From positions 293,560 to 357,559 of the IMG/VR virus record IMGVR_UViG_3300044701_000569: DNA of 64,000 bases; one strand, written 5' to 3'. Shown one piece after another: positions 23,070 through 45,400 of this stretch. Under the pieces are notes generated by a model, which was given only the letters and a program-made list of their open reading frames with translations, was not told the origin of the DNA and searched no databases. Each line of letters begins with the position of its first letter. Position 1 is the stretch's first letter. The position numbers and the translations under genes are program-made.

Positions 23070-23510
23070 ATGGAAGATGCTTACACTACAGCATTTTACG
23101 ATCTAGTCAAGGACACTCAAGAGCGTTCAGGTTTCGAATTGCCAGAACAGATTGAGGCGTATGTAGTCATGCTGTTGGCTAATTTTGTTGATCGTCCAAA
23201 CTTTCTCCCAACTCGATCATTTGCAGAAGCATACTTAAAACTTCATCGTCCTGCAGACCTGTCAGCTAAAGAACTAGGTGATACCTGTCTTTTTGTTACC
23301 GGTGTATTTCCTACCTACGGTTCAAACAGAGGCATGAATAGACGCTACTATCAAACTATTGGTATAGGATCTTATGAAATGGTCGCTGAAGTAATGCACA
23401 GAGATTTGTTTATCAATCTTGCAACCCACTTTGAGTTTATCAGCGACTTTATAGAATTAACTGTAAGGAATAAAAATCTAGGGGCCGTAACCCCTAGATT
23501 TGATTTATGA
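23070..23510 (+). CDS. hypothetical protein (late, possibly leaderless)
   Basis: TAAATA at 23059-23064, 5 nt before the ATG. Confidence 0.75.
   Translation: MEDAYTTAFYDLVKDTQERSGFELPEQIEAYVVMLLANFVDRPNFLPTRSFAEAYLKLHRPADLSAKELGDTCLFVTGVFPTYGSNRGMNRRYYQTIGIGSYEMVAEVMHRDLFINLATHFEFISDFIELTVRNKNLGAVTPRFDL
23473..23501. terminator. hairpin between convergent genes
   Basis: aaatctagggg-ccgtaa-cccctagattt. Confidence 0.65.
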
Positions 23511-24011
23511 ATTTAATACCTTAGCAACTGAATTCATAACACTAGCAATACGTCCAATGTCACGAAGCTGTTCAACTGTATAGCCTTCTGTCTTCAGTGT
23601 TTCATAATGTGCCTTAACACAGAAATGACACTTGCCTACAATACTGGCAGCAAGACTAAACGCTTCAAAGTTTGACTTAGTAGTTCCGCCATGACTAGCA
23701 ATAGCGTTCATGCGTAACTGTGCTGGCAATCCTTTCAGCGCAGGATCATCAGCCATCTCAACATAGGGGTACCAGGTATTGTTTTGGGCCATAGTTGATG
23801 CGGCTGTCATTGCTGACTCTGCGTATACTGGAGCATCTGCTAATAGTACAGCAAGTACTTTACCGTTGCCTGTTGAGGCAAGTGCGGCTACAGCACAACC
23901 CATAGCTACATCTGCATCTAGTGTACTACGCAATAGAACAGCGTCAAGATTTAACTTGGTGTCCTTTGCGTAGTCTGGCAACGCAGTTTTAATTGCGTCA
24001 ATGAATGCCAT
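23505..24011 (-). CDS. ahpD: alkyl hydroperoxidase D
   Basis: LPDYAKDTKLNL, MAQNNTWY, LRMN, GKCHFCVKAH. Confidence 0.93.
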   Translation of the reverse strand: MAFIDAIKTALPDYAKDTKLNLDAVLLRSTLDADVAMGCAVAALASTGNGKVLAVLLADAPVYAESAMTAASTMAQNNTWYPYVEMADDPALKGLPAQLRMNAIASHGGTTKSNFEAFSLAASIVGKCHFCVKAHYETLKTEGYTVEQLRDIGRIASVMNSVAKVLNS

Positions 24012-24544
24012 TACAGTGTCTCTCCGCCTACTGCACGATTACATGCACAAAGTTCACCAGTTTGTAGAGCGTCTAGTACACGCAGAGTTTCTTCTGGGCT
24101 ACGACCTACGTTCAAGTTGTTGACAGTAACGTGCTGGATAACATTGTTTGGGTCAACGATGAATGTAGCACGAAGTGCTGCGCCTGCTGGAGCGTAGAAT
24201 ACACCAAGTTGATTGATTAGGCTTAGTTCACCACGCTGTGTGTCTGCGAACTGTGTATGTGTAATCTTAGCAAGATCAGGATGTGCCTTCTGCCATGCTA
24301 GCTTGCAGAACTCATTGTCTGTGCTTCCTGTGAGCAATACTGCATCACGATCCTTAAAGTCGCCTGTTAGCTTGTCGTAAGCAACGATTTCTGTTGGGCA
24401 AACGAATGTAAAGTCCTTAGGGTAATATACAATTACCTTCCACTTGCCTTCAAATGACTCGTCTGTAATGTCAAAGAATTGATCACTACCTGGGTTTACG
24501 CCTGTAACGGCAAATGCTTCTAGCTTATCGCCAACTGTTTTCAT
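24011..24544 (-). CDS. ahpC: alkyl hydroperoxide reductase C (2-Cys peroxiredoxin)
   Basis: YPKDFTFVCPTE, ALRATFIVDP, VGRS, LCAC. Confidence 0.95.
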   Translation of the reverse strand: MKTVGDKLEAFAVTGVNPGSDQFFDITDESFEGKWKVIVYYPKDFTFVCPTEIVAYDKLTGDFKDRDAVLLTGSTDNEFCKLAWQKAHPDLAKITHTQFADTQRGELSLINQLGVFYAPAGAALRATFIVDPNNVIQHVTVNNLNVGRSPEETLRVLDALQTGELCACNRAVGGETL

Positions 24545-25292: not shown

Positions 25293-25391
25293 GGTGTTCC
25301 TTACATTATAGTAGTAGTTATTGTTAACTGTCAGAATTTAAAGGTAAAAGTGGTAAATACATGTAGCGCAGAGCGTGAGGGGCATACAAAT

Positions 25392-25670
25392 ATGGAATTT
25401 CTAAAACTCGTGGGCGAGGTAGGGTTTCCGATTGCTGCTGCTATAGCAGCCGGTTATTTCGTCTTTTTAACAGTAAAATTTATTCTGCAGGGCGTAAACA
25501 GCAGTGTAAACGGATTAAAAAACATTATTAGTGCTCTGGACAATCGTGTCCAGACTATGAACAACGACCTAGTTAAGATTGATGCGCTGTTAAGCTACGT
25601 TATTGGTGTTAGACCTAACGTTGACAGACTAGCAGCTAACGAAGGCAAAGAGGATGCTAGGAGAGATTAA
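25392..25670 (+). CDS. YvrJ-like small membrane protein
   Basis: VGFPI motif, TM helix, coiled coil; GAGG SD and TAAATA upstream. Start reassigned from 25104. Confidence 0.75.
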   Translation: MEFLKLVGEVGFPIAAAIAAGYFVFLTVKFILQGVNSSVNGLKNIISALDNRVQTMNNDLVKIDALLSYVIGVRPNVDRLAANEGKEDARRD

Positions 25671-26014
25671 TGAATACCAATGAATTAGTACAAGCAATTA
25701 ATCAATACGGATTTCCTATTATAGCTGCAATGGGCTTAGGATACTTTGTATATTACATCTGGCAGTGGGCAACACAGGAAATTAAACCAGTGCTTGGGGA
25801 CGCAAGCTCAACCCTAATTAAACTTGTGGATCGTATTCGCATGTTAGACAATGACATGATACGTCTCAACACAAAACTATCAATGGTGCTAGAGTATCGT
25901 CAAGAAATTGAAGCCGCTGCTACACAAAAAGAAAAAGAAGACCTAGAAGAGCTATTGCACAAGTATAAGAGCTTCAGCAAAGGTTTTGATTCTACAGGTG
26001 ATGCTAAAAAATGA
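25670..26014 (+). CDS. YvrJ-like small membrane protein (paralogue of the previous gene)
   Basis: YGFPI...GYFV...DRIRMLDNDMIRL. Confidence 0.75.
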   Translation: MNTNELVQAINQYGFPIIAAMGLGYFVYYIWQWATQEIKPVLGDASSTLIKLVDRIRMLDNDMIRLNTKLSMVLEYRQEIEAAATQKEKEDLEELLHKYKSFSKGFDSTGDAKK

Positions 26015-26154
26015 CAGGACTGTTAAATGCTATAAGCGGTAAAGTTTTTACTGAATGCGACCTAGTCGCAGCACTAGGGGTAGGATTCTTAATTGGAACG
26101 CTCTACACACTTACTGTTTTAATGTTGTTACACAAGCTTCAAGGCGTGTTTTAA
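26011..26154 (+). CDS. possible small membrane protein, 47 aa
   Basis: ATGA-coupled; LVAALGVGFLIGTLYTLTVLMLL; overlaps the 3' end of the convergent gene. Confidence 0.4.
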   Translation: MTGLLNAISGKVFTECDLVAALGVGFLIGTLYTLTVLMLLHKLQGVF

Positions 26155-26698
26155 TAATATCAATCACTGAATCACTGAGTACTACTTCATAGTGATTTAG
26201 CTCTACTTCTACCAGTTCCATATCTTCATGATGCTTCATGCTGTCAATAGTAACTACACCGTCGTTGGGTGCTATCATAAAAGGGCTTTGTCCTCGTAAC
26301 GTAACTACGTTAGTCCACGGATGTTGTATCTTAATTTTATCTGCTTGCCTCATGGGCCAACTGTTGGGACCTATGTCTCTCATTAGTCTAGAGAACGGTA
26401 AAAAATACTGTACATAATTTGCTACTTCTGCTCCGCCGTAGGGCGTACTAAGAGTCACAGCACCCAGCACTTGTTTAGGCATATGATTGGCTAGATGTAG
26501 AGAGTATATACCGCCTAAACTATGTGCTATAAAAAATATATCTTTTGTATTCATTAACGACAGTTTCATTGCAGCTAGATTATTTTCAAATCCGTCTCTA
26601 CTGTCGTAGTCAATGTCTATGCCCCTGCCTAGCTTGCTTCTAATATAATTAAAACTTTCGCTAGTAGCACTAGCACCATGTATGTAAACTAGGTTCAT
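26111..26698 (-). CDS. alpha/beta hydrolase (lipase/esterase-like)
   Basis: YIHG oxyanion segment, AHSLGG nucleophile, NDGVV, NHYEV. Confidence 0.88.
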   Translation of the reverse strand: MNLVYIHGASATSESFNYIRSKLGRGIDIDYDSRDGFENNLAAMKLSLMNTKDIFFIAHSLGGIYSLHLANHMPKQVLGAVTLSTPYGGAEVANYVQYFLPFSRLMRDIGPNSWPMRQADKIKIQHPWTNVVTLRGQSPFMIAPNDGVVTIDSMKHHEDMELVEVELNHYEVVLSDSVIDIIKTRLEACVTTLKQ

Positions 26699-28740
26699 TT
26701 CTCAGTTGCAATCCATTCGCCTTGCCAATCGTCACCTAGGTTCTGCTGTTTCATGAACTGGCAACGTTCAAACCAAATTTCGTAATACTTGTCCATTTGT
26801 CCATTAAATGTTCCCTTCATCATAGCACACATTTCAGCAGCTTCGTCAAACTTTTTCTGTTTGTACCAAGCATGCATGGCATTATGGGTATCACGATCCA
26901 TAATATATTCACGTTCGTTGCCCTTTATTCTCAGCACTGTGTATATGTTGTCAGCAACAGTTTTTCCTTTGGGCTGTAGGTTGTCTAGGTATAGATAGAA
27001 AAAGTCATCTTTGGTTCTGTTGTAGGTTTCAGCACCAATGATAGCCAACACACCATAGGCTTTGCAACGTGCTTCTAGTCGTGCAGCAGTACTAACCATG
27101 TCACCTAGTATGTCATAGCCGTGGCGTTCAGTTGATCCCATCTCACCTATAAATCCAGTGCCTGTGTTACAACCCCATCCCATAGCAGCAGGAGGTAAGC
27201 CCTGTGCTTCCATGTCTGCTGTATAACGATCCACAGCATCCAACATTTCTAGTCCTACCTTAACAATGGTGCGAGCATGATTAGGATCATCAATTGGAGC
27301 ACCATGCATGTGCATGCTAGCGTCACCTACATACTTAATAACCATACCTTTGTTGTTCATGATAGGTATAGTAATAGCATCCATATAGCCATTCATATAC
27401 TTGGCTAAGCCACCTACATCATCTCCATAGTGTTCACCAATTGGTGTGAAGCCACGTAGGTCTGAGAACATAACTGATACATCTTTACGCACACCTCGCT
27501 TGATAAGTTCTGGATCTTTCTGTAGCATCTCTACTACTTCCTTAGAGCAGTAGCCTGCAAACTGTTTCTTGATTGCCTGCTTCTGTAGGAATTCACTTAC
27601 AAACTTAATGCCATAAGTATGCAGAGCCACGAGTACAAAAGTAATCGTGCTTGCCGTCGCGTCTCCCAGGAAGGCTCCGTTATGGAAATAGTAATAAGAA
27701 GCAGCCACAGGGGTAATGATCCCCACAACAGTTGTAACGAGTCCGACATAAGTCCACCTTGATAGTAAAATTATTAGGGCACCTACTACAAGTATAAACA
27801 TGTATTCTGCGCTCTGTGCCCAGTCAGGACGCTGAATATTGCTGCCATTAAACATTGTTCCCAGCAGTGCTGCCTGCACATCTTGGGGATACACTGAACC
27901 CTTTGCTGTGGGTACAGGATTAGATAAGCCTGCGGCACTTACACCTACTATAACCACAGCACCATTAAAATCTTTGGGCAAATCAGCTGCACTAACACTC
28001 TTGTTAGTCTGACTCCAATCAACCCATACTCTACCATCTTGTTCTGTAGAGATAATACCAAATTTAGGTATTCTCAATTTTTCTACACCGTACTCGTTCA
28101 GTTTAATTTGAAAATTAGGATCACCTGCAATTACTCGTAGAGCTTCTAATGAAAGGCTGGGATACAGTACACCATCCACTGCTACCACAAGAGGTAATCT
28201 TCTGGTAACTCCGTCTATCTCAGTCATGGTGCTGACTATACCTACGCCCGCTGCATTCTTTTCCAGTGAAGGAACGTTTGCAATTATACCTTCTGCTGTG
28301 GGTATCTTGTGCAGGTACTCACTGCCCACAATAGCAGCGCCAGGATTCTTAGGTTGATTCTTTGTCTTATCGCTGGGTTGATTAGGTAGTATTACTGGTA
28401 GCTGTGCCAGTGTATTGGCTAAGAAAGCATCTCCGTTGAATCTGTCTTTCTCTGGCATCATCACGTTGAATATTACTAGTCCTGCGTTTCTAGCATACAG
28501 GTTGTGTATTAGTTCTGCATACACAGTTCTAGGAAAAGGCCACTGTCCCCATTTATCAAGTGATGCTTCATCTATGTTTACTGTATAGATATTGTTCTCT
28601 GTAGGTTCCTTAGAAGTAATAAGCCTGTCAAAGTAGTTTAACTTAACAGCTTCTAAGAATACAGGCTGCGACATAAACGTTGCCAGCAGTACGAATAGGG
28701 TTACAAATGCCCATAGTGGGTTGACAAATAGTTTCTTCAT
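26695..28740 (-). CDS. CHASE2-domain class III adenylate cyclase
   Basis: IDEASL..GQWPFPR, DGVTRR (CHASE2), three TM helices, FSDLRGFT, KYVGD, GDMVSTAARLE. Confidence 0.93.
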   Translation of the reverse strand: MKKLFVNPLWAFVTLFVLLATFMSQPVFLEAVKLNYFDRLITSKEPTENNIYTVNIDEASLDKWGQWPFPRTVYAELIHNLYARNAGLVIFNVMMPEKDRFNGDAFLANTLAQLPVILPNQPSDKTKNQPKNPGAAIVGSEYLHKIPTAEGIIANVPSLEKNAAGVGIVSTMTEIDGVTRRLPLVVAVDGVLYPSLSLEALRVIAGDPNFQIKLNEYGVEKLRIPKFGIISTEQDGRVWVDWSQTNKSVSAADLPKDFNGAVVIVGVSAAGLSNPVPTAKGSVYPQDVQAALLGTMFNGSNIQRPDWAQSAEYMFILVVGALIILLSRWTYVGLVTTVVGIITPVAASYYYFHNGAFLGDATASTITFVLVALHTYGIKFVSEFLQKQAIKKQFAGYCSKEVVEMLQKDPELIKRGVRKDVSVMFSDLRGFTPIGEHYGDDVGGLAKYMNGYMDAITIPIMNNKGMVIKYVGDASMHMHGAPIDDPNHARTIVKVGLEMLDAVDRYTADMEAQGLPPAAMGWGCNTGTGFIGEMGSTERHGYDILGDMVSTAARLEARCKAYGVLAIIGAETYNRTKDDFFYLYLDNLQPKGKTVADNIYTVLRIKGNEREYIMDRDTHNAMHAWYKQKKFDEAAEMCAMMKGTFNGQMDKYYEIWFERCQFMKQQNLGDDWQGEWIATEK

Positions 28741-28776
28741 AAAGTATTTATGAAGAAAAAGATTCTAAAAAGGTTT

Positions 28777-30450
28777 TTATTGTCCCTGTGTTACAGTTAT
28801 AGGACCACAGCTTATGTTAGCACACGAATGTGTGATTGAATAGTGCTGCTGTGTTGGTCCTGACTGTGTTACAGTAATACCTGTAGCGCCGCCACTTAGT
28901 GTTATGTTGCTCATGTGTGCTGCACTACCTTGTTGCAGCACATTTACTGTCTTGTTGCCGCCACTAAGAGCTAGTTCAAGGTAATGATTACCACTGTCTT
29001 TCTGTTCAACTGTTACACTGTTATTATTGCTACTAACATTAGCACTAATACCTTTAGTACCACCCGTGCTCTGTTGCGTAATATTCAGTGTATTATTGCT
29101 GCCTGATAAGAACAGTTCACTATAGTTTGTAGCAGATCCTGATGTAGAAGTTTGATTCACTGTTACGTTGTTAAACGAACCTGTACTGCGCACTTCAGCA
29201 TAATTATTTTTAGTACCTAACTGTGTAATGTTAATAGTACTCGAATTACCTATTTGTTCAACAATTACTCTTGTGTCCTGTGAAGCTCTACCTTGAAAAC
29301 CTGTAACTCTATTCACTACACCTGAGTTAGCATTGAATGGTGCGGAACTTCCACCGCAGCAAAGTGTACTAGGATTAGCTACACTACCACTACCTACATC
29401 TGTCGCTGTAGTTGCATTGTTGCTGTCATAATAAAAGGTGATCTCAGCTATCTGCATACTGTCGCAGTTTAGGCCGCACCCGTCGCCAGCTTTGGTTGTT
29501 GGAAAGAAAATGTAATAATAAACATAAGCGGTAGAGTTAGTAACAGTAATCATTGCACTAGTGTCAAACCTATTATTGCTTAGATTTAGATTACCATCCT
29601 GTATCAGTGTCCATGTAGTGCCATTATTTGAGCCGTACAGTTTGTAACTGGTGGGATCTCTACCAGGAAAGTCGTTGGCTGTGGTTAATGTAAAACCCGT
29701 AACTACTCGACCCGTATTTAATTTAACGGTAACTCCCGCATTGTATTTGTCAAAGTTTAGATATTTAGTATAGGGATTATTATCAAAAGCATTAGCTGCG
29801 CCTTCATTTGGCGGACTGTTGTTGCTGGTAGGATAATGATTAGTGATATAAACATTACTACTGTTGTTATAGATAGCTGTTGGTACAGGACTAGGTGCAG
29901 GTGCTGTACTACTAGGTGTTTGTGTAGCAGTTTGTCCCTGTGTTAACGGAACCGTAGAATAATTAGCATCAGCATAAGTGTTTGCTTGTTGTATAGTAGG
30001 ATTAAGTGTACCAGTCCACGATACTCCGCTGGTGTCACTCATGCCTGATGATCCGCTGAATAACTGTCCTGTGTTATTATCATTACCTACAAAGAAGAAA
30101 TAATCAGGACCTATATTAACAATCTTACCAGTGCCTAGTGTACCTGCTACAGTTCCGTTACTGTTGTAAACTTTAGCTTCATAAGGATAACTGGCATTAC
30201 CAGTTAAACTAAATTTAACGTACTGCCCTGTCTGCCAACTCCACTGTCCTGATGTCCAGGGAATTTTGTAAGCTGTACCTGGCTGTTTACTGTAGATTTC
30301 GCAGGTAGTTGTATACAAGCAGGCGCTTACGTTCCATTGGCTGTCAGCAATTTGATATCTGCCAAACTGAATGTCAGTGAGATCAGCCCGTGCTGCCGTT
30401 GACAGGAATAATAGTGCTATAGCAAATAAAAATTTTTTTATCTGTTCCAT
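28777..30450 (-). CDS. secreted discoidin (F5/8C-like) plus curlin-repeat protein
   Basis: Signal peptide; NAFDNN..TKYL, TANDFPGRDP..YKLYGSNNGTTW, MQIAEI; C-terminal QxG/N repeats. Confidence 0.8.
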   Translation of the reverse strand: MEQIKKFLFAIALLFLSTAARADLTDIQFGRYQIADSQWNVSACLYTTTCEIYSKQPGTAYKIPWTSGQWSWQTGQYVKFSLTGNASYPYEAKVYNSNGTVAGTLGTGKIVNIGPDYFFFVGNDNNTGQLFSGSSGMSDTSGVSWTGTLNPTIQQANTYADANYSTVPLTQGQTATQTPSSTAPAPSPVPTAIYNNSSNVYITNHYPTSNNSPPNEGAANAFDNNPYTKYLNFDKYNAGVTVKLNTGRVVTGFTLTTANDFPGRDPTSYKLYGSNNGTTWTLIQDGNLNLSNNRFDTSAMITVTNSTAYVYYYIFFPTTKAGDGCGLNCDSMQIAEITFYYDSNNATTATDVGSGSVANPSTLCCGGSSAPFNANSGVVNRVTGFQGRASQDTRVIVEQIGNSSTINITQLGTKNNYAEVRSTGSFNNVTVNQTSTSGSATNYSELFLSGSNNTLNITQQSTGGTKGISANVSSNNNSVTVEQKDSGNHYLELALSGGNKTVNVLQQGSAAHMSNITLSGGATGITVTQSGPTQQHYSITHSCANISCGPITVTQGQ

Positions 30451-31520
30451 TGTCTCACCGTTACAACTGTGCTGCCGTTGCCCACTGTGCGTGTTTCAAT
30501 ATCATTAGAGTTTACGCTAACATTGTAGGTAACATTATCAAACTTTTCGCCTGTTCTAATACTAATGATATTGCCTCGCAACTCATCCTGTTTGTAATAA
30601 TAGTTACGTCCTTTTTCATTTCCACATTCATTGAAGGGATAACAGGTATTGCCTCCTAGTGTGCCGTCTTCAACTTTGCCTGCTGTGGCTGCGGCAATTA
30701 TCTTTGTTTCAGCAGCTTCCTGTGCTCTCAATGCTGCTAGTCCGCTAGCTCCCTGTTGGTGGGAATTTTTTTCCTCTTGTGTTTCTTTAACTGCGGGGCG
30801 TTTTCTTTCTTCTTGTTCTGTTCTAGCTTCTACTATAGCACCAGGCATTTTAAGGATACTGTCATTACGTGCTACTTGAGATAGATCCATAGGAACCTGC
30901 ACAGGTGGCAGTGGAGGTTGATTAGAATCTACAACGTAAGTAGCCGTGAATGCTTGGTTAAGCACTACACTGCCCAATGCTGTCATAACTTCAATAGAAC
31001 CTGTTATGCAATTTCCTGCAATCTCATATTTCTTCAGTGCTTCTTCAGTTGTACAGCTGGGCAGTAGAACCACCATGCTTCTACCTGCTTCGTCAACTGT
31101 CATTGAAAAATCTGTGCCGCGCACAGCAATAGTGGCTGTGGGAGTTTTTATGTTTACCTGCTGAGGATTATTTTTAGCAATCTGTCCTGAAGCGTATCTC
31201 ACAGAACCCAGTGCTACTTTGATTCCCAGTTTACCTGCGTCTGCATTTTTAGGATCGTACACGAAGTCATCAATAACCAAGCGACTGTTTGCTGTAATCT
31301 TTACATTGGTATTATCTATAAATTTTAACTCAGCACTGGTGTTGGAACCAACTATGATTAAATCGTCACTGAGAATGCCTGTGCTTCTGGTTAGAGCAGA
31401 TTTTTTCTTTGCTCGTTCCAGTTGGGCATGTTCCCCAGTCAGTGAAGTCACACTTCCAATGTTTGCTTCAGCGATACTGGGGATTGATAAACACGCCAAC
31501 AACAACCATAATAGTTTCAT
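30438..31520 (-). CDS. FecR-domain periplasmic protein
   Basis: Signal peptide, IDDFVYDP, KTPTATIAVRGTDF. Confidence 0.88.
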   Translation of the reverse strand: MKLLWLLLACLSIPSIAEANIGSVTSLTGEHAQLERAKKKSALTRSTGILSDDLIIVGSNTSAELKFIDNTNVKITANSRLVIDDFVYDPKNADAGKLGIKVALGSVRYASGQIAKNNPQQVNIKTPTATIAVRGTDFSMTVDEAGRSMVVLLPSCTTEEALKKYEIAGNCITGSIEVMTALGSVVLNQAFTATYVVDSNQPPLPPVQVPMDLSQVARNDSILKMPGAIVEARTEQEERKRPAVKETQEEKNSHQQGASGLAALRAQEAAETKIIAAATAGKVEDGTLGGNTCYPFNECGNEKGRNYYYKQDELRGNIISIRTGEKFDNVTYNVSVNSNDIETRTVGNGSTVVTVRQWNR

Positions 31521-32194
31521 TACTTCCCTGTTGACACAATTACTGTGTTAGAGTTACCGTTGGTGTTGATTGAAACAGTGGTATCAACTATACCATGCTG
31601 TGTAACTGTATGTGTGTTACTGGTGCCTAGAACTGTAGCTAACAAGTGATGTCCGCCGCCTGCACTAGGACCACTCATGGTATTAGTAAAGGTATTGGAA
31701 TCGCCTGTTATAGATATGTTAGCAGTACTGTTACTGGTTTGGATATTTTGTGTAACTGTATTGCTATTGCCTGTAATACCCAAGGTGTTGGTAATGTTAG
31801 CACCTTTGATAGTCTGAGTCACTGTATTCATGTTACCGCTAATGGTTGTAGTAGAAGTAACTGAAGTACAGGCAGTTGTGCCATCACCGCAATTCATTGT
31901 TACGGTGTTGTTGTTTCCAGTGATATTTTTAATTATTGTGTTTGAATCACCTACGACTGTGTAGTCAAGAATGTTTCCATCACCGGTCTGTGTTGCTGTC
32001 ATTGAGTTGTTATTTCCAGTGATAGTAGAATGAGTTGCAACTGATCCTACCTTATTTAGAGCACCAACCTGAGTAATAGTCACAGTGTTACTATTACCGA
32101 TCTGTTCAATATAAACAGCATTGTTTGCGAATGCAGCCTGAGTAAACATCACACTCACTACTGCTGCCGCACTAGCCATTAATATTTTTTTCAT
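31520..32194 (-). CDS. curlin-repeat protein (CsgA/CsgB-like)
   Basis: Signal peptide; IEQIGNSN, ITQVGALN, ATQTGDGN and repeated (I/T)xGxxN; rich in N, T, G. Confidence 0.8.
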   Translation of the reverse strand: MKKILMASAAAVVSVMFTQAAFANNAVYIEQIGNSNTVTITQVGALNKVGSVATHSTITGNNNSMTATQTGDGNILDYTVVGDSNTIIKNITGNNNTVTMNCGDGTTACTSVTSTTTISGNMNTVTQTIKGANITNTLGITGNSNTVTQNIQTSNSTANISITGDSNTFTNTMSGPSAGGGHHLLATVLGTSNTHTVTQHGIVDTTVSINTNGNSNTVIVSTGK

Positions 32195-32268
32195 AATTAT
32201 TGCCCTCTTTGATCCCGTTACTGTTGATAGGACGGATCTTCCTTATATGACATAGCCCTATGTCTATT

Positions 32269-33165
32269 TTATTTTTTTTCTTCTGCCTTTTCTTCTGCCT
32301 TGGTTTCTGCCTTGTTTTGCGCTGCAGGTTGTGTGACTGCTGCATCACCTGGTTGAGGCCAAGGTGCTGCAACTGGTTTAGAAAATGCCCAGTGTCCTTT
32401 ACGAGCACCATCATTGATTAGCTCAATCACTGCCCCGTGAACTGCTAACTGTGTTGCTCTGTTAATGCTTTCATTTGCAGCTACACCTGATTCTAGCTCA
32501 AATGCTTTCTGTCCCAGTTCATAGAATTTGATTACACCCACTCTATCCTGAACTGAAGCTACAGTTTTCTTAACCATTACAGATGAAAGAACTTCACCGC
32601 TGGACACACTAACTGCTCGTAGACTGATAACTACTTCATCCTGTCTGTATTCTGTTGAAGCACCAATGCCCAACAGTCTAGCACCATTACCGCCACTTAC
32701 TGTGTTTGAGTCATAGCCCACAATACCGCCTTCCAGCAGTATTCCTGCGAACACCATTGGAGGTAAAGGCTGTGCTTTATCTCCTTGATAGAGTTCTCTC
32801 ATCTGACGTATAAGTTGACGCTCTTTGATAATGTTGTCTAGTCCCCCACGCTCTACTACTTTGAACCATTGTCCGCCGCCTATGGTTTGTAGGCTTTGAA
32901 TTAGATAGTTGTCTGCGCCCTGTGTTACAGCAGAACTTAGACTGGCTATGTTCTGTACTGATTTTCTTTGTCCTGTTAGGTCTCTAAAGTTGTAGACAGC
33001 CACAGTCAATGCTCCCTGTGCAGGAGGTGCTAGTTGTGGTTCTTTCTTTAGCTCAGGAACAGTTACAACAGGATCATCCCAAGTTCTTAATTTAGCTGTG
33101 TTTATACTGGCACAACCTGAAAGCACTGTTGCTGCTAAAAGTGTTGAAATTAATTTTAGTTTCAT
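32269..33165 (-). CDS. csgG: curli secretion channel lipoprotein CsgG
   Basis: Lipobox LSGC; AVYNFRDLTGQRK, SSAVTQG, WFKVVER, LLEGGIVGYD. Confidence 0.93.
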   Translation of the reverse strand: MKLKLISTLLAATVLSGCASINTAKLRTWDDPVVTVPELKKEPQLAPPAQGALTVAVYNFRDLTGQRKSVQNIASLSSAVTQGADNYLIQSLQTIGGGQWFKVVERGGLDNIIKERQLIRQMRELYQGDKAQPLPPMVFAGILLEGGIVGYDSNTVSGGNGARLLGIGASTEYRQDEVVISLRAVSVSSGEVLSSVMVKKTVASVQDRVGVIKFYELGQKAFELESGVAANESINRATQLAVHGAVIELINDGARKGHWAFSKPVAAPWPQPGDAAVTQPAAQNKAETKAEEKAEEKK

Positions 33166-33617
33166 GGTGCGATCCATCCAAAGTCCCCGATCGGAACTGT
33201 CATTGTTGTAACATTGCCCTGTGCATCTCTAATTGTAATTTCAATTAGATTGCCTGTCTTTGTATATGTTATTGTTCCACCATTAAACGCAAAGGTGCCC
33301 ATTACCTGTGAGCCAGTACCTTCAAATAGCTTTTCAGTAATCTGTCTTGCTAGTTCATTATACACACGACTTTCTAGGTTAGCTATAAATCTAGCCATAG
33401 TTGTGTTTTTAGCATCTAGTTCTTCTTTTAATTGTTCTGCTTTCTTTTCAGCTGTTATAGCTAGTCTTCTACTTAATTCTTGATTGTAAACAGACAGTAC
33501 GTGACTGCTGTAGCCTATGCCTGAAAAGGAAGGATTGTTAAATTGAAATACTATTTCACTTGCATTTGCAGATGATGCAAGAATGGCAAATGTTGCCGCG
33601 GTTATTATTTTCTTCAT
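33162..33617 (-). CDS. csgF: curli assembly protein CsgF
   Basis: Signal peptide then IVFQFNNPSFSG (CsgF FxNPxFGG motif); GGAGG SD; coupled to csgG. Confidence 0.85.
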   Translation of the reverse strand: MKKIITAATFAILASSANASEIVFQFNNPSFSGIGYSSHVLSVYNQELSRRLAITAEKKAEQLKEELDAKNTTMARFIANLESRVYNELARQITEKLFEGTGSQVMGTFAFNGGTITYTKTGNLIEITIRDAQGNVTTMTVPIGDFGWIAP

Positions 33618-33655
33618 CGTGCCCTCCAGAAGAATAGAGATTTCTTCTACAGTAT

Positions 33656-33661
33656 TATTTA
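33656..33661 (-). promoter_or_regulatory. TAAATA late-type promoter of the curli operon
   Basis: Motif recurs upstream of structural-region genes. Confidence 0.6.
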
Positions 33662-33692: not shown

Positions 33693-35333
33693 TTATTTGG
33701 AAGCAATGTATCCAGGAGTAGGAGTCTGCTGGTCATCATTCCAGTTAAATCCTGCACCCATTACTACTGTTTTACCTAGCTTTTTAACTAGGTCACTACC
33801 ATCTTTAATTATTGTATAATCAAGTGTGTCTGTTCTCAAGAACATGATAGTAGTTATACCATCTGCTAGATGATAGCTTTCATAGGCTATTCTTGCATAG
33901 ACCTTGTTCATTTTTTCTACGTCAACTGTGCCATCCTGATTAATTGCTGTAGCAATCAACTTGTCAGAGTTTTTAATCTTGTCAAGATTTAGCACAAGTG
34001 CCTTTATGGTGTTATAGAAAAGTTCATAAGTTTTATTGAAGTCACTAAATGGTTCAAGAATTTCTTCGTTTAGTGCTTGAAAACCTTTTGGATTCCAGTT
34101 GTACTTGTTGCCTAACTTAGCTTTGCCTTTTATTACGTTGTATTGATTACCATCAAATTTATTAAGAGGAACCTTGATTCGATTTCCCTTCTTATCAGTA
34201 CTATAAATTGTAGCGTTATCAGGAGCAGCTGATAAAATAGCATTAATGCCTTTTCTCCATGGTTCCCAACCAGCAGTAGCTTTTGCAATACTCTTACTGT
34301 TTAGTCGACCACCCGTTGACGCACTAGCTTTAATCTCAAGTTCAGTGTCGCCAACCTTGAGATCGCCTTTCTTTGCTTTCTCCGCAGGATTGCCCATCAT
34401 TGATAGTGCCATCTCTCCTGGTCCAATTGCTCCAGAAGTCTTACCAGGACTATAACTAAAAATGTTTTGTTCTACAAAGATGTCAAAAAGTTTCTTGTAC
34501 TTAGGATTAACATTGTCTTTGATGTTACCTCTGTCTGTACCTATCACAGACAACATATTGATAACATCGCCCTTAACACAAGCAGCTAAGAAATCTTTAA
34601 TTTCTTTAGGGTCTACGTCTGCTTCAGATTGAATGTCAACAATTTTACCAAATAGTGCCTGCTTTAAGGTTTTAGTAAATTCCGCTGCGTTAACAGCTCG
34701 TTTAGTTGCTAGTGTTCTTTCTTTAGAAGTCATTGCGCCGAGGTCTTCTTCTTGGTAGCCTTGAACTTTATTGCCAAGTGCTACTAGATAGCTACTAACT
34801 TCTCTTACAAAACTTTCAGCTTCTTTTTGTTTTCCAACAGCAATATCTTTTGCTGATTTAAGTTCCTCAACCTGTTTAGTCAACTGATCAAGATTCTTAC
34901 GCATAGGGGTAATAAATTGCTTCTTAACCTTTTCGTCAATATTTGAAGCTTCAATAGCTTTGATCTGATCCTTTAAAGTTGCAATAGTGCTTAGAATTGA
35001 AGAATCTACTTCTTCAGACTCTCTAATGCTCTCAACAGGTGCAGGTTGTGGTGTAGCTGGTTGTGGCTGTGCAGGTTTAGCAACAGGTGCAGGCTGCGGC
35101 GTAGCTGGTTGTGGTTTTTCTTGTTGTTGTATGTTTGCTTTAGACAAGAAAGCAGCAATACTATCTGACATCTGTTTAAGTTTATTTGCAACAGATGTTT
35201 TAACATTTTGTTTTTCTGGCGGTAGTTGTGAAAGTGCAGATCCAATTACATCAAGATCGTGAATTGCTTTTTGAGCTTCAAGGTCTGATTGCTCAACAGC
35301 TTCTTTAATAACTAATAACTCTCTAAATTTCAT
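33693..35333 (-). CDS. large protein with coiled-coil N-terminus and PD-(D/E)xK nuclease-like C-terminus
   Basis: GPGE...KGDL...LEIKAS; PQPA repeats; TAAATA upstream. Confidence 0.65.
   Translation of the reverse strand: MKFRELLVIKEAVEQSDLEAQKAIHDLDVIGSALSQLPPEKQNVKTSVANKLKQMSDSIAAFLSKANIQQQEKPQPATPQPAPVAKPAQPQPATPQPAPVESIRESEEVDSSILSTIATLKDQIKAIEASNIDEKVKKQFITPMRKNLDQLTKQVEELKSAKDIAVGKQKEAESFVREVSSYLVALGNKVQGYQEEDLGAMTSKERTLATKRAVNAAEFTKTLKQALFGKIVDIQSEADVDPKEIKDFLAACVKGDVINMLSVIGTDRGNIKDNVNPKYKKLFDIFVEQNIFSYSPGKTSGAIGPGEMALSMMGNPAEKAKKGDLKVGDTELEIKASASTGGRLNSKSIAKATAGWEPWRKGINAILSAAPDNATIYSTDKKGNRIKVPLNKFDGNQYNVIKGKAKLGNKYNWNPKGFQALNEEILEPFSDFNKTYELFYNTIKALVLNLDKIKNSDKLIATAINQDGTVDVEKMNKVYARIAYESYHLADGITTIMFLRTDTLDYTIIKDGSDLVKKLGKTVVMGAGFNWNDDQQTPTPGYIASK
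35033..35115 (-). repeat. intragenic duplication encoding PQPATPQPAPV twice
   Basis: Two near-identical caacaggtgcagg...gtagctggttgtgg units 48 nt apart. Confidence 0.8.
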
Positions 35334-35359
35334 GGGCAACCCTAAATCTTATAATATAT

Positions 35360-36055
35360 TTATACTATTTTAGGGAACAGCATGTCTGTACAAAACAGAT
35401 CCACTTCTGCTTCGTTAAGCCCTAGACTTTTCATTACATTAGGTGTATGGGGGTTTTGACGCTGATTGTCACAGTACCAGTTCTGTGCCTTAACAGTATC
35501 TTCTAAGGCTGCTGAATCAGCATAGTCACTGATCTCGTCAAAATAGGCTCGTAGGTTATTAAGTGCTATGTTTATAATTGCTACAGCTTCTTCTTCTGTG
35601 TTGACATTTCCAGCAGCCAACATCTTATCTGTAAAAATATTCTTAGCCCACTGTGGCAGTTCTCTCTGCTTCTTAGGTATAAAATCTTCTACACTATCCT
35701 TGTAGCCTAGAATCATAGGATGATTCGCGCCACCACTCGAAGGACTAAAATCGTGAAACGCACCTGTTATCTTATTCTTACCAGCAATAACATCAAAGCC
35801 GTAGATAGGTCCGCCGTTGGTAAGGCTAGGAAACACACAGACGTGCATCATCCAAAGACCTTTGCTTTCTCTAGCATCTACAACATCAATATGAGCCCTA
35901 CGCACATGTAGATTAGCCCATACACGATTAACCCAGCCCCCGTCGCTCTTATTAAATTGCGACATTCCCGGTTCGTTAATTTCAACTGCGTGTTCTTCAA
36001 ATATCTTGATAATCTCGTCTTTGCAATCAATTAGCTTTTCCCAAATTACACTCAC
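35360..36055 (-). CDS. ferredoxin-dependent bilin reductase, PcyX/PcyA-like
   Basis: RRAHIDVVD, MMHVCVFP, PIYGFDVIAG, RELPQWA..IF, YCDNQRQNPHT; next to heme oxygenase. Confidence 0.88.
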   Translation of the reverse strand: MSVIWEKLIDCKDEIIKIFEEHAVEINEPGMSQFNKSDGGWVNRVWANLHVRRAHIDVVDARESKGLWMMHVCVFPSLTNGGPIYGFDVIAGKNKITGAFHDFSPSSGGANHPMILGYKDSVEDFIPKKQRELPQWAKNIFTDKMLAAGNVNTEEEAVAIINIALNNLRAYFDEISDYADSAALEDTVKAQNWYCDNQRQNPHTPNVMKSLGLNEAEVDLFCTDMLFPKIV

Positions 36056-36585
36056 TCTTTAATCTCCGACATCTGTTGGAATAACTTAGTTGCAAAGTCA
36101 AAACAAATCTTAGCTTCTTCAGCCATGCTATCGTTTAGTCTAGCACGTATTCTTTCTTTCAGTTCTTCAACTGGTTCATTGAATTGATACATCTTTCCTG
36201 AACCCGGTACTCGCTTTGCTAACATCTGTCCACCACTCAAGTCGCCCATATGTCGAACATAAATGTGTGCCATTAACTTGTCCGGATCATCCTGTATCTT
36301 AACTAGATGATCCATGTATTCTTTTACTACGGGCAGCAACGGTGGTTGCTTATTAGTATCTGTCCATAGTTCTTGATAATCTTCGTGTATTGCAGGAGCA
36401 CGTCTTACATCAAGTATACCGTGTACCATTGCAAATACTTCTAGAAGATTATACTGAGGGTGCTGATTAAAAAGGAACGTTGCATAACGTTCCTTTGATA
36501 GGTTACTAGAAAACATCTCACGGACAAATTCTTGCCGTTCAGCAGCTTTATGATGTTCCCAAGTTAGTTCTTTTAAGTTGCTCAT
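36052..36585 (-). CDS. biliverdin-producing heme oxygenase
   Basis: LKELTWEHHKAAE, AHIYVRHMGDLSGGQ, EEAKICF. Confidence 0.92.
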   Translation of the reverse strand: MSNLKELTWEHHKAAERQEFVREMFSSNLSKERYATFLFNQHPQYNLLEVFAMVHGILDVRRAPAIHEDYQELWTDTNKQPPLLPVVKEYMDHLVKIQDDPDKLMAHIYVRHMGDLSGGQMLAKRVPGSGKMYQFNEPVEELKERIRARLNDSMAEEAKICFDFATKLFQQMSEIKE

Positions 36586-41562: not shown

Positions 41563-41620
41563 ATTTCCTTATAACCTTTTTAGGTTTATCATAATGTATG
41601 TATATTTATGATATGCAGAT

Positions 41621-41647
41621 AAAAAGAAAGGCGCCCTAGAGCGCCTT
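41621..41647 (-). terminator. intrinsic terminator ending the tmRNA transcript
   Basis: AAGGCGC-tctagg-GCGCCTT then TCTTTTT. Confidence 0.75.
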
Positions 41648-41999
41648 CCTCACTGTTCTGTTGCCCGGTAAGTGAACCGCGAACCTGCTGTTTCTTAGGC
41701 AGCTAGCGCAAAGTTGTTGTCATTGACAGCAACGTTTACGAATAGTTCAGGAGTAAAGGTTTTTGTGCCGTTTACTTGATTTTGCTTCTTTTACGGAGAT
41801 CGCCTACCGTGTTGCCGTCTCTACTATCTCACCCAATCGATCCTAGTTCAGCCCCATCATAAAAGGACAATTAGCATGACAGTTACAATGACTGTAAATC
41901 CTACTAAAAATCTTACTAGATCGTCTTCCATAACTATCCTTTTATGGTGGAGCTGGCGGGAGTTGCACCCGCGTCTTGAATGCCTTCGCTTTGAAGGGA
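41648..41999 (-). ncRNA. ssrA: circularly permuted (two-piece) tmRNA
   Basis: Acceptor piece ...GCGGGTGCAACTCCCGCCAGCTCCACCA ends at 41945 and precedes the coding piece, which starts GGGGCTG at 41855. G3:U70 pair present. Tag frame ends NDNNFALAA-TAA at 41695. Outer ends approximate. Confidence 0.92.
41857..41931 (-). CDS. putative 24-aa TM peptide inside the tmRNA intervening segment
   Basis: AAGGA SD, ATG, MEDDLVRFLVGFTVIVTVMLIVLL, TGA. Confidence 0.5.
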   Translation of the reverse strand: MEDDLVRFLVGFTVIVTVMLIVLL

Positions 42000-42012
42000 T
42001 TACAACAATTTC

Positions 42013-45372: not shown

Positions 45373-45400
45373 AGTATAGCACAAAGTTTGGATTTGTCAA
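45373..45400 (-). promoter_or_regulatory. sigma70-like promoter TTGACA-N16-TATACT
   Basis: Read directly; -35 overlaps the PAAR gene stop. Confidence 0.8.

What the first reader, a model, noticed from the sequence alone, without database searches (positions are those of the whole stretch)
26111..33661. Phage curli secretion system joined to a FecR-CHASE2 adenylate cyclase relay
Seen: one co-oriented late cluster, csgF-csgG-curlin-FecR protein-discoidin/curlin protein-CHASE2 class III cyclase-alpha/beta hydrolase, with overlapping or short junctions and export signals on every envelope component. No CsgE, CsgC, CsgD, ECF sigma or TonB receptor is present. Known: CsgG/CsgF form the type VIII amyloid channel; csgF/csgG occur in some aquatic myophages; FecR-domain proteins partner CHASE2 cyclases in rhizobial signalling. 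Inference: the infected cell displays a lectin-bearing amyloid-like fibre whose assembly or contact is relayed through FecR to CHASE2 to make cAMP. This would be a phage surface-sensing system that could aggregate new hosts, shield the cell from grazers or superinfection, or time lysis. FecR may replace CsgE under the pore.
Basis: partly seen in the sequence, partly recalled or inferred. Interest (0 to 1): 0.9.

Follow-up and report, generated by a model that had tools for sequence, protein, structure and literature searches.

The report
Known phage curli module with cyclase sensor
This is a new example of a gene set already described in marine phages, a curli fibre secretion system joined to a FecR-type protein and a membrane cyclase, whose function has never been tested and for which the sequence now suggests a concrete model.

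Summary
On the minus strand, 33617-26695, lie csgF, csgG, a 224-aa curlin, a secreted FecR-domain protein, a second curlin with a discoidin (CBM32-like) head, and a CHASE2/class III cyclase. Junctions are tight and export signals are where expected.

It is not new. The same six-gene cassette is annotated in Pelagibacter phage HTVC008M and Methylophilales phage Melnitz. Wittmers et al. 2022 (PMC9599517) described curli genes plus FecR plus adenylate cyclase as a widespread, transcribed pelagiphage module.

In 80 viral loci the order held wherever flank allowed: 79/79 for the upstream genes, 62/65 for the second curlin, 45/46 for the cyclase. The alpha/beta hydrolase and the upstream 548-aa ORF occur only in this lineage. 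"Late" expression has no support.

What I add:
- The cyclase sensor is CHASE2.
- In bacteria, FecR-domain proteins sit next to CHASE2 sensors whatever the output domain, and without csg genes. The cassette is therefore a curli unit joined to a FecR-CHASE2 sensing pair.
- The phage FecR ends in a curlin-like repeat (hhalign E 9e-6; controls at least 0.07).
- The second curlin's head domain is variable.
- The cyclase carries Asn-to-Ser at the transition-state site.

Fibre display, lectin binding, a FecR-to-CHASE2 relay and cAMP output all remain inference.

The parts
33162..33617 (-). csgF. 151 aa counted from the ATG with a GGAGG Shine-Dalgarno; the mechanical ORF starts at a TTG at 33668. Has a signal peptide.
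   Evidence: Pfam CsgF E 8.6e-18; phrog_35372; start and SD; signal peptide; present in 79/79 viral loci.
32269..33177 (-). csgG outer-membrane lipoprotein channel subunit, 302 aa, with an LSGC lipobox.
   Evidence: Pfam CsgG E 4.6e-50. phmmer to solved E. coli CsgG E 5.8e-43, with the lipobox aligned; the E. coli constriction residues Y/N/F align to V/S/L.
31520..32194 (-). Curlin A: a 224-aa secreted curlin-repeat protein and candidate fibre subunit.
   Evidence: Pfam Curlin_rpt E 2.8e-5. The family profile A5 hits the solved curlin-repeat protein 8c50 at E 2.7e-9. Signal peptide.
30438..31520 (-). Secreted FecR-domain protein, 360 aa. It has a signal peptide, a FecR-type beta domain (about residues 22-200), a helix plus a disordered linker, and a C-terminal beta domain (298-357). 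It has no anti-sigma domain and no transmembrane segment.
   Evidence: Pfam FecR E 2.6e-11. AF2 model pLDDT 82. Foldseek to PupR CCSSD (6ovk) and BDI_1681 (4m0n), E about 1e-4. Invariant Cys156/Cys171.
30441..30578 (-). Curlin-like tail of the FecR protein, the last roughly 46 residues.
   Evidence: hhalign of the FecR C-terminus against the curlin B repeat family gives E 8.8e-6 and probability 83%. Controls were reversed sequences, the FecR N-domain, six unrelated families and 30 column shuffles, all with E at or above 0.068. The tail is absent from bacterial CHASE2-partner FecR proteins. It is not detected by Pfam Curlin_rpt or by a single-repeat HMM.
28777..30450 (-). Curlin B: a 557-aa modular secreted protein made of an N-terminal beta domain, a discoidin/CBM32-like domain and about seven curlin repeats.
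   Evidence: Pfam F5_F8_type_C E 6.3e-10. AF2 model pLDDT 79 with 14 regular strands at 392-555. Foldseek to CBM32 modules, TM 0.75-0.78. C-terminus to 8c50, E 9e-9, and to the curlin A family, E 7.6e-9. Head domain varies among loci.
26695..28740 (-). Membrane CHASE2 sensor fused to a class III nucleotide cyclase, 681 aa. Layout: TM1, periplasmic CHASE2, three TMs, cytoplasmic cyclase.
   Evidence: Pfam CHASE2 E 2.5e-39 and Guanylate_cyc E 7.2e-15. phrog_35576 over the full length. Hydrophobic segments. Catalytic residues D427, K469, D473, D543, S550, R554.
26111..26698 (-). Small cytoplasmic alpha/beta hydrolase, 195 aa. It is translationally coupled to the cyclase, is specific to this lineage and is not part of the conserved cassette.
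   Evidence: Weak Pfam hits below cut-off. Found only in L003/L004 among 80 viral loci. No signal peptide.
33693..35339 (-). Upstream 548-aa ORF of unknown function with a proline-rich repeat and coiled coil. It is lineage-specific and preceded by the window's only TATAAATA.
25389..26014 (+). Two tandem paralogous small TM plus coiled-coil proteins (phrog_18771), convergent with the end of the cassette. They are recurrent companions of the cassette.
   Evidence: phrog_18771 E 1e-30. The same pair lies directly upstream of csgF or downstream of the cyclase in 48 of 82 loci. No Pfam or PDB assignment beyond coiled coil.

Best explanation
The region is one more copy of the curli (type VIII secretion) auxiliary module known from marine pelagiphages and methylophages. 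I read it as two units joined together.

Unit 1 is a minimal curli machine of the alphaproteobacterial type. CsgG is the outer-membrane channel and CsgF its cap. There are two Sec-exported curlin-repeat proteins: a plain 224-aa subunit, and a modular one whose variable N-terminal head is here a CBM32/discoidin sugar-binding fold.

Unit 2 is a periplasm-to-cytoplasm sensing pair. A secreted FecR-domain protein works with the periplasmic CHASE2 domain of a membrane class III cyclase. The same pairing occurs in bacteria with cyclase, kinase or phosphatase outputs.

In the phage version the FecR protein has gained a curlin-like C-terminal repeat. This gives it a way to bind curlin subunits or fibres. 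The cyclase could then report or control the state of curli export or assembly in the infected cell, most likely through cAMP.

Shown: gene content, export signals, folds, homologies and conserved order.
Inferred: that fibres form, that the head is displayed and binds sugar, that FecR touches CHASE2 or curlin, the direction of signalling, and the nucleotide made.

The confidence of 0.55 is for the whole two-unit reading including the inferred steps. Identity with the published phage module alone is about 0.95.
For: - Domain calls.
- The same cassette is annotated in HTVC008M and Melnitz and is described in PMC9599517.
- Order is conserved: 79/79 loci for the upstream genes, 62/65 for the second curlin, 45/46 for the cyclase.
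- Both curlins are homologous to the solved curlin-repeat protein 8c50, and a beta-solenoid-like C-terminus is predicted.
- The head domain matches CBM32 structures.
- Export signals and conserved Cys pairs are present.
- The FecR N-domain matches periplasmic FecR/PupR domains.
- Six of the eleven complete bacterial contigs found (L086-L093, L095-L097) have a CHASE2 neighbour: cyclase in four, SpoIIE phosphatase in one, histidine kinase in one. None has csgG or csgF.
- Published FecR-CHASE2 clusters exist in Burkholderiales, Pseudomonas aeruginosa, Campylobacterota and Sinorhizobium meliloti.
- The FecR tail is homologous to curlin B repeats (E 8.8e-6; all controls at or above 0.068). The tail is absent from the bacterial partner proteins.
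- Five of six catalytic residues of the cyclase are intact, including the adenine-specifying Lys.
Against: - No experiment exists for any step.
- Melnitz cultures showed no clumping (PMC9004378).
- The CsgG constriction residues differ from those of E. coli.
- The transition-state Asn of the cyclase is Ser in this subtype, so activity may be low or altered.
- In S. meliloti the FecR-domain neighbour of cyaD1 acts downstream of cAMP and was not needed for signal perception.
- Variable genes of up to 4.5 kb can separate curlin B from the cyclase, and one locus lacks the cyclase.
- The curlin-like tail is not detected by Pfam or by a single-repeat HMM.
- The folded, Cys-containing head of curlin B may not pass the narrow CsgG channel. 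It could then stay in the periplasm as an anchor rather than be displayed.
- No cAMP receptor was found among the neighbours tested.
Confidence: 0.55

Rival explanations
1. The CsgG-CsgF pore is the functional core. It has been repurposed as a gated outer-membrane channel for lysis timing (pinholin or secretin-like) or for import of nutrients or cofactors. No fibre is made.
For: This was proposed for Melnitz and for pelagimyophages (PMC9004378, PMC7029224). No clumping was seen in Melnitz cultures. The CsgG constriction residues are changed. CsgE is absent. TM plus coiled-coil small proteins recur next to the cassette.
Against: Two genuine, signal-peptide-bearing curlin-repeat proteins are kept in essentially every locus (79/79 and 62/65), and they are homologous to a solved curli subunit. 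A bare pore has no use for them. CsgF, which is needed for surface nucleation and not for pore assembly, is also always kept.
Confidence: 0.12
2. FecR and the CHASE2 cyclase sense an external or envelope cue unrelated to curli, such as iron, cell-wall state or superinfection. They then set cAMP to control phage or host genes, possibly including the curli genes. In this reading curli is the output or is unrelated, not the input.
For: This is the regulatory view taken in PMC9599517. The bacterial FecR-CHASE2 pairs work without csg genes. In bacteria the accessory domain on the FecR partner can be LysM, pointing to peptidoglycan. Variable insertions separate the cyclase from the curlins.
Against: The FecR gene sits between the two curlin genes with overlapping junctions. 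Only in phages does FecR carry a curlin-like tail, which points to curlin as its ligand. No cAMP-responsive regulator was found nearby.
Confidence: 0.2
3. FecR is not a signalling protein here. It is a periplasmic chaperone, gate or nucleator-anchor for curlins, a functional stand-in for CsgE/CsgC/CsgB. The cyclase is an independent auxiliary gene that travels in the same variable island.
For: FecR has a curlin-like tail. CsgE and CsgC are absent. A Foldseek match links part of the FecR model to the periplasmic retention plug of an RTX adhesin (5ix9, TM 0.73 over 62 columns). Locus L018 has the curli genes and FecR but no cyclase.
Against: The cyclase is retained in 45/46 loci. The independent FecR-CHASE2 pairing in bacteria makes coincidence unlikely. 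Which part of FecR aligned to 5ix9 is not known.
Confidence: 0.15
4. The heads of curlin B, discoidin among them, stay in the periplasm as plugs or peptidoglycan anchors that tether a fibre threaded through CsgG. They are not displayed as lectins.
For: The folded heads are about 340 aa with conserved Cys pairs and the CsgG channel is narrow. RTX adhesins use such periplasmic plugs (PMC5550230). Bacterial FecR partners carry the peptidoglycan-binding LysM domain.
Against: The head is hypervariable among phages: discoidin in 27/62 loci, other types in the rest, total lengths 175-806 aa. This looks more like diversification against external ligands. Short versions have no head at all.
Confidence: 0.15

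Closest known systems
Pelagiphage/methylophage T8SS (curli) module: HTVC008M gp014-gp019, Melnitz gp99-gp104, and HTVC023P-type podophages (Zaragoza-Solas 2020; Buchholz 2022; Wittmers 2022)
   Same: Same six genes in the same order. Cyclase 43% and CsgG 47% identical to Melnitz, 36% and 45% to HTVC008M. A permuted tmRNA lies a few kb upstream, as in Melnitz. CsgE/C/D are lacking.
   Different: Only distant at DNA level (no megablast hit). The source contig is 357 kb rather than about 140-150 kb. Curlin B carries an N-domain plus a discoidin head. An extra hydrolase and a 548-aa ORF are present. The small phrog_18771 pair sits at the other end, on the opposite strand.
Alphaproteobacterial-type minimal curli operons (csgG, csgF, curlins; no csgE/csgD)
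   Same: CsgG, CsgF and curlin-repeat subunits with Sec signals. Wittmers et al. place the phage proteins nearest alphaproteobacterial ones.
   Different: Bacterial curli operons are not reported to contain FecR or a cyclase, and I found no csgG/csgF next to bacterial FecR-CHASE2 pairs. The constriction residues of CsgG differ from the E. coli structure.
Bacterial FecR-domain protein plus CHASE2 sensor gene pairs (Burkholderia 'BiofilmReg' LysM-FecR + CHASE2 kinase; S. meliloti cyaD1-SMc02177; Campylobacterota CHASE2 cyclase-PDE-FecR-TPR cluster)
   Same: A secreted FecR-domain protein without an anti-sigma domain is encoded next to a sensor with TM, CHASE2 and three TMs.
   Different: The phage FecR has a curlin-like tail instead of LysM or nothing. 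It is embedded between curlin genes. No response regulator, Crp-type regulator, PDE or TPR partner was seen in the window.
FecA-FecR-FecI cell-surface signalling
   Same: The FecR-type periplasmic beta domain (Pfam, and Foldseek to PupR CCSSD). The concept of an outer-membrane event relayed through a periplasmic FecR domain.
   Different: No cytoplasmic anti-sigma domain, no TM helix, no ECF sigma factor and no TonB-dependent transducer are present. The iron-regulator label does not apply.

Membership tests
Pelagiphage T8SS/curli auxiliary module (Wittmers et al. 2022) | Gene order csgF-csgG-curlin-FecR-(second curlin)-adenylate cyclase on a phage contig | tested here: met
   The same order is seen in HTVC008M and Melnitz and in 80 IMG/VR loci.
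CsgG (T8SS channel) | Pfam CsgG domain, lipoprotein signal with Cys, and homology to solved CsgG | tested here: met
   E 4.6e-50. LSGC lipobox aligned with that of E. coli CsgG, E 5.8e-43.
CsgG (T8SS channel) | Constriction-loop residues as in the E. coli structure (Tyr/Asn/Phe) | tested here: not met
   Aligned residues are Val/Ser/Leu, with a one-residue insertion in the loop. The consequence for pore size is unknown.
CsgF | Pfam CsgF domain over its full length, plus a signal peptide | tested here: met
   E 8.6e-18 over profile positions 2-132 of 132. Signal peptide from the ATG at 33617. No direct phmmer hit to solved CsgF.
Curlin (CsgA/CsgB-type fibre subunits) | Tandem curlin repeats homologous to a subunit with a solved fibre structure, plus a Sec signal | tested here: met
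   Curlin A family to 8c50, E 2.7e-9. Curlin B C-terminus to 8c50, E 9e-9, and weakly to 8enq, E 0.66. Fourteen regular strands predicted.
Curlin (CsgA/CsgB-type fibre subunits) | Forms CsgG/CsgF-dependent extracellular amyloid | not testable with these tools
   Needs expression with Congo red, ThT and EM assays.
Enterobacterial curli system (csgBAC-csgDEFG) | CsgE gate, CsgC chaperone and CsgD regulator present | tested here: not met
   None found in the cluster or among ORFs within about 12 kb. The same is reported for all phage copies.
FecR-type anti-sigma factor (FecIRA cell-surface signalling) | N-terminal cytoplasmic anti-sigma domain plus a TM helix, with an ECF sigma factor and a TonB-dependent transducer partner | tested here: not met
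   The protein starts with a cleavable signal peptide directly followed by the FecR domain, with no TM. No sigma70_r2/r4 or TonB receptor was found nearby.
FecR-type periplasmic domain | Pfam PF04773 and the fold of PupR/BDI_1681 periplasmic domains | tested here: met
   E 2.6e-11. Foldseek E about 1e-4, rmsd about 3 A over about 155 columns.
CHASE2 sensor | CHASE2 domain flanked by one N-terminal and several C-terminal TM helices, with a cytoplasmic output domain | tested here: met
   CHASE2 at residues 15-322, E 2.5e-39. Hydrophobic segments at about 8-30 and 313-377.
Class III adenylate cyclase | Two metal-binding Asp, an adenine-specifying Lys with Asp/Thr, a transition-state Asn and an Arg | tested here: inconclusive
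   D427, D473, K469, D543 and R554 are present. The Asn position is Ser550. This DKD-D-S-R signature is shared with Melnitz and 21 of 47 unique phage proteins. The rest of the phage proteins, and the bacterial relatives, have Asn.
Bacterial FecR-CHASE2 sensing pair | A secreted FecR-domain protein encoded beside a CHASE2 sensor | tested here: met
   In the window the two genes are separated only by curlin B. In bacteria they are adjacent in L087-L091 and L097, with three different output domains.
Bacterial FecR-CHASE2 sensing pair | Physical or functional interaction between FecR and CHASE2 | not testable with these tools
   No multimer prediction was available. The one genetic test in S. meliloti did not support FecR acting upstream of the cyclases.
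Discoidin / CBM32 carbohydrate-binding module | F5/8 type C domain and a CBM32 jelly-roll fold | tested here: met
   Pfam E 6.3e-10. Foldseek TM 0.75-0.78 and rmsd 2.4-2.9 A to galactose-binding CBM32s. Ligand binding was not tested.

The most novel reading that the evidence does not exclude
The phage FecR protein acts as an amyloid-templated sensor. Its curlin-like tail docks onto curlin B subunits or the growing fibre at the CsgG/CsgF pore, and its FecR domain passes that state to the CHASE2 domain. Curli export or fibre contact would then be converted into a cyclic-nucleotide signal inside the infected cell. This would be the first link between functional-amyloid assembly and second-messenger signalling, and the first ligand logic for CHASE2: the accessory domain on the FecR partner defines what is sensed.
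Probability: 0.15. Interest if true: 0.8.

Novelty: new member of a known kind. Interest (0 to 1): 0.4.

Why it matters
The module is among the most widespread auxiliary gene sets of phages infecting the ocean's most abundant heterotrophs. Wittmers et al. found it at 65 of 65 Global Ocean Virome stations and found it transcribed. Its function is still openly called a mystery.

Three points turn a vague "regulatory genes near curli genes" statement into a specific model that can be tested in laboratory E. coli:
- The cyclase sensor is CHASE2.
- FecR-CHASE2 is an old bacterial sensing pair.
- The phage FecR carries a curlin-like tail.

It could also give CHASE2, a common sensor domain with no known ligand, its first mechanistic handle. 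As a discovery of a new system, however, the finding is not new.

Tried and rejected
- Megablast of the whole region against phage genomes found nothing. Relatives are visible only at protein level.
- Late-promoter idea: TATAAATA occurs once in 64 kb against 4.7 expected. The sigma-70 and terminator scans were uninformative.
- Pfam Curlin_rpt on 13 FecR proteins gave no hit even at E 5.
- A 23-residue single-repeat HMM did not beat composition-matched shuffles, although best hits clustered at the C-terminus. Only the profile-profile comparison was significant.
- A sequence search of the FecR C-terminus against the PDB found nothing. I could not establish which part of FecR matched the RTX-adhesin plug 5ix9.
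- The genome-contig scan returned only 15 loci. Three of them are phage-like contigs inside MAGs, so the bacterial sample is small.
- Wittmers et al. report a histidine kinase upstream of csgF. The recurrent small proteins I find there (phrog_18771) show no HisKA or HATPase by Pfam or by PDB profile. I did not examine podophage loci.
- The ribonucleotide reductase search gave no useful host clue.
It was rerun without them.
- I rejected a virion-structural role for the curlins, because every one has a Sec signal and conserved Cys pairs.
- I rejected the 'iron regulator' reading of FecR, because the protein has no anti-sigma domain and no sigma factor or transducer accompanies it.

Full report
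WHAT IS THERE. On the minus strand between 33668 and 26111 lie seven co-oriented ORFs with overlapping or short junctions. Pfam assigns them as follows:
- CsgF, E 8.6e-18.
- CsgG, E 4.6e-50.
- A 224-aa Curlin_rpt protein, E 2.8e-5.
- A 360-aa FecR-domain protein, E 2.6e-11.
- A 557-aa protein with an F5/8 type C (discoidin) domain, E 6.3e-10.
- A 681-aa CHASE2 (E 2.5e-39) plus class III cyclase (E 7.2e-15) protein.
- A 195-aa alpha/beta hydrolase, with hits only below the Pfam cut-offs.

Reading the translations gives the export signals:
- CsgF has a signal peptide when started at the ATG at 33617, which has a GGAGG ribosome-binding site.
- CsgG has an LSGC lipobox.
- Both curlins and FecR have cleavable signal peptides.
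- The cyclase has one transmembrane helix before CHASE2 and three after it, which puts CHASE2 in the periplasm and the cyclase domain in the cytoplasm.
- The hydrolase has no export signal.

The C-terminal 165 residues of the 557-aa protein are curlin repeats. They match the solved curlin-repeat protein 8c50 (E 9e-9) and the curlin A family (hhalign E 7.6e-9). The AlphaFold model shows 14 regular strands there.

IT IS A KNOWN MODULE. PHROGs already holds families for CsgF, CsgG, FecR and the full-length CHASE2 cyclase. tblastn finds the cyclase and CsgG in Methylophilales phage Melnitz (43% and 47% identity) and in Pelagibacter phage HTVC008M (36% and 45%). Their GenBank annotation shows the same six genes in the same order: Melnitz gp99-104 and HTVC008M gp014-019.

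Three papers cover it:
- Zaragoza-Solas et al. 2020 reported csgF/csgG in pelagimyophages and proposed fibre-mediated 'sibling capture' (PMC7029224).
- Buchholz et al. 2022 proposed a pinholin or secretin role in lysis timing, and saw no clumping in Melnitz cultures (PMC9004378).
- Wittmers et al. 2022 explicitly described CsgF, CsgG, CsgA/B, FecR, a second CsgA/B and an adenylate cyclase as one module in pelagi-podophages and pelagi-myophages. They report its presence at 65/65 Global Ocean Virome stations, its transcription, the lack of CsgE, and the superinfection-shield, aggregation and import hypotheses (PMC9599517).

None of these papers mentions CHASE2, discoidin or lectin domains, signal peptides, or the C-terminus of FecR.

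SYNTENY SURVEY. A scan of IMG/VR with the FecR protein found 503 viral stretches. It also showed that the window comes from a 357,559-bp contig. In the best 80 loci, searched with the window's proteins:
- CsgF, CsgG and curlin A precede FecR in 79 of 79 loci with enough upstream flank.
- A second curlin follows FecR in 62 of 65 loci.
- The CHASE2 cyclase follows in 45 of 46 loci with at least 7.5 kb downstream.

Many loci are close relatives, so these are not independent counts. The distance from curlin B to the cyclase is at most 63 bp in 23 of 61 loci. It reaches 4.5 kb where unrelated genes are inserted.

Curlin B is modular. Its C-terminal repeats are constant, but its total length runs from 175 to 806 aa. 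The head is discoidin in 27 of 62 loci, the window-type N-domain in 15 (9 of them with discoidin as well), and something else or nothing in 29. The hydrolase and the upstream 548-aa ORF occur only in the window's own lineage (L003, L004). They are not part of the cassette.

THE FecR-CHASE2 PAIR IS BACTERIAL AND INDEPENDENT OF CURLI. A scan of one genome per bacterial species with a FecR alignment gave 15 loci. Three are short contigs binned in MAGs that carry the whole cassette and share flanking genes with viral loci, so they are probably phage DNA. One further locus (L094) is a 1.9-kb fragment.

Among the other eleven contigs, six have a CHASE2 protein next to the FecR-domain gene, with three different outputs:
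- A cyclase in three Betaproteobacteria and one Treponema.
- A SpoIIE/PP2C phosphatase in a gammaproteobacterial MAG.
- A histidine kinase in Parazoarcus, where the FecR protein also has a LysM domain.

None of the eleven has csgG or csgF nearby. The sample is small, but it agrees with the literature:
- LysM-FecR plus a CHASE2 kinase in Burkholderiales and P. aeruginosa (PMC5192318).
- CHASE2 cyclase, phosphodiesterase, FecR and TPR clusters in Campylobacterota (PMC9239204).
- The consecutive genes clr, cyaD1 and SMc02177 (FecR domain) in S. meliloti (PMC5498481).

FecR therefore goes with the CHASE2 sensor domain, not with a particular output. The phage cassette is best seen as a curli unit fused to this sensing pair.

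One caution applies. In S. meliloti the FecR-domain gene is a target of the cAMP regulator and was not required for signal perception. The only genetic test so far does not place FecR upstream of the cyclase.

A CURLIN-LIKE TAIL ON THE PHAGE FecR. The AlphaFold model (pLDDT 82) has four parts:
- A FecR-type beta domain at residues 22-200. It matches the periplasmic domains of PupR and BDI_1681 (Foldseek E about 1e-4).
- A long helix.
- A disordered linker.
- A 60-residue beta domain at the C-terminus.

All 63 unique phage FecR proteins end in a motif that resembles a curlin repeat. Pfam's Curlin_rpt model does not detect it, and a short single-repeat HMM was no better than composition-matched shuffles.

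A profile-profile comparison of the last 75 residues against the curlin B repeat family gives E 8.8e-6 (probability 83%, 46 columns). Against curlin A it gives E 5.5e-3. Controls all gave E of 0.068 or more: reversed sequences, the FecR N-domain, six unrelated families from the same loci, and 30 column-shuffled alignments. The bacterial CHASE2-partner FecR proteins lack this tail.

I regard the tail as probably real but not proven. It offers a physical way for FecR to bind curlin subunits or fibres.

Part of the FecR model also matches the periplasmic retention plug of an RTX adhesin (5ix9, TM 0.73 over 62 columns). The tool does not say which part matched, and a sequence search could not settle it.

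STATE OF THE COMPONENTS.
- CsgG aligns along its length with solved E. coli CsgG (E 5.8e-43). The three constriction residues Tyr/Asn/Phe align to Val/Ser/Leu.
- The curlin A family profile hits 8c50 at E 2.7e-9.
- The discoidin domain superposes on galactose- and GalNAc-binding CBM32 modules (TM 0.75-0.78).
- The cyclase keeps both metal-binding Asp, the adenine-specifying Lys, the second specificity Asp and the Arg. The transition-state Asn is Ser550.

Among 47 unique phage cyclases, two signatures exist: Lys/Thr with Asn in 24, and Lys/Asp with Ser in 21, plus two variants (one with an alignment gap at the second metal Asp, one with Ser and Asn). Melnitz shares the window's signature. HTVC008M and the bacterial relatives have Asn. 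The Ser variant is conserved and so is under selection, but its activity and product are unknown.

CONTEXT. The cassette lies in a region rich in auxiliary genes:
- Heme oxygenase and a bilin reductase immediately upstream.
- ClpS, Hsp20 and a GMP reductase-like gene.
- A permuted tmRNA.
- Peroxiredoxin and an AhpD-like gene.
- A 2OG-Fe(II) oxygenase.
- Ribonucleotide reductase.

No ECF sigma factor, TonB-dependent receptor, CsgE/C/D or cyclic-nucleotide-binding protein was found among the ORFs tested. TATAAATA, the T4-type late promoter core, occurs once in the window, upstream of the 548-aa ORF, against 4.7 expected by chance. 'Late' expression therefore cannot be claimed.

Two tandem small TM plus coiled-coil proteins (phrog_18771) lie convergent with the end of the cassette. 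The same pair sits directly upstream of csgF in HTVC008M-type loci, and the family occurs in 48 of 82 loci. They have no kinase domains. They may be what was reported as a short 'histidine kinase' in podophages, but I did not check podophage loci.

VERDICT. The system, however, is a published and widespread phage module, so this is a new member of a known kind.

It gains indirect support from the bacterial FecR-CHASE2 pairing and from the curlin-like tail on FecR. Every functional step is still inference. There are also specific points against it:
- The rhizobial genetics.
- The absence of clumping in Melnitz cultures.
- The Asn-to-Ser change in the cyclase.
- The possibility that the folded head of curlin B cannot pass through CsgG.

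My best reading is a curli-type fibre system coupled to a FecR-CHASE2 cyclase sensing pair, held at moderate confidence. The main rivals are a pore-only function, a cue unrelated to curli, and a chaperone or anchor role for FecR.

Noticed in passing
whole window; source contig IMGVR_UViG_3300044701_000569: The window comes from a 357,559-bp viral contig. Other contigs with the same cassette range from about 141-146 kb (pelagimyophage size) through 171-212 kb to 280-373 kb. The cassette therefore spans very different genome sizes, unless some contigs are concatemers or chimeras.
   Followed up: no
41604-42070 (-): A permuted (two-piece) tmRNA with tag peptide VAVNDNNFALAA, found by ARAGORN and by Rfam (RF04321, 127 bits). 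It lies a few kb upstream of the cassette, as the tmRNA does in Melnitz.
   Followed up: partly
35360-36585 (-): A heme oxygenase and a ferredoxin-dependent bilin reductase lie directly upstream of the cassette. A bilin reductase lies 2-6 kb upstream of csgF in many related loci (24 unique sequences). This is notable for phages whose cultured relatives infect non-photosynthetic SAR11 and OM43.
   Followed up: partly
25389-26014 (+): Two tandem paralogous small proteins of about 93-114 aa (phrog_18771), each with an N-terminal TM helix and a coiled coil, lie convergent with the cassette. The same pair sits directly upstream of csgF in HTVC008M-type loci, and the family occurs in 48 of 82 loci. 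No kinase domain is detectable. Function is unknown; holin- or antiholin-like, or signalling, are possibilities.
   Followed up: partly
26695-28740 (-), residue 550: The cyclase has Ser in place of the transition-state Asn, co-varying with Asp rather than Thr at the second specificity site. This signature is shared with Melnitz and with about half of the phage homologues. It is absent from HTVC008M and from the bacterial CHASE2 cyclases examined.
   Followed up: yes
L012, L064 and nine other viral loci: A calcineurin-like metallophosphoesterase recurs near the cassette in 11 loci, in some of them between curlin B and the cyclase. The family includes class III cAMP phosphodiesterases, but no assignment was possible.
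   Followed up: no
23505-24544 (-), 45397-46446 (-), 51175-52797 (-): Other auxiliary or structural oddities: a peroxiredoxin (AhpC/TSA) plus an AhpD-like CMD protein pair; a 349-aa PAAR-motif protein; and a 540-aa protein with an Mtd_N domain and a pectate-lyase-like beta helix, probably a fibre or depolymerase.
   Followed up: no
L083, L084, L085 (MAG contigs labelled Rhodobacteraceae, Pelagibacter, Flavobacteriaceae): Short contigs (6.8-19 kb) in three bacterial MAGs carry the complete phage cassette, with flanking genes shared with viral loci. They are probably phage DNA binned into MAGs, and could mislead host or origin inferences.
   Followed up: partly
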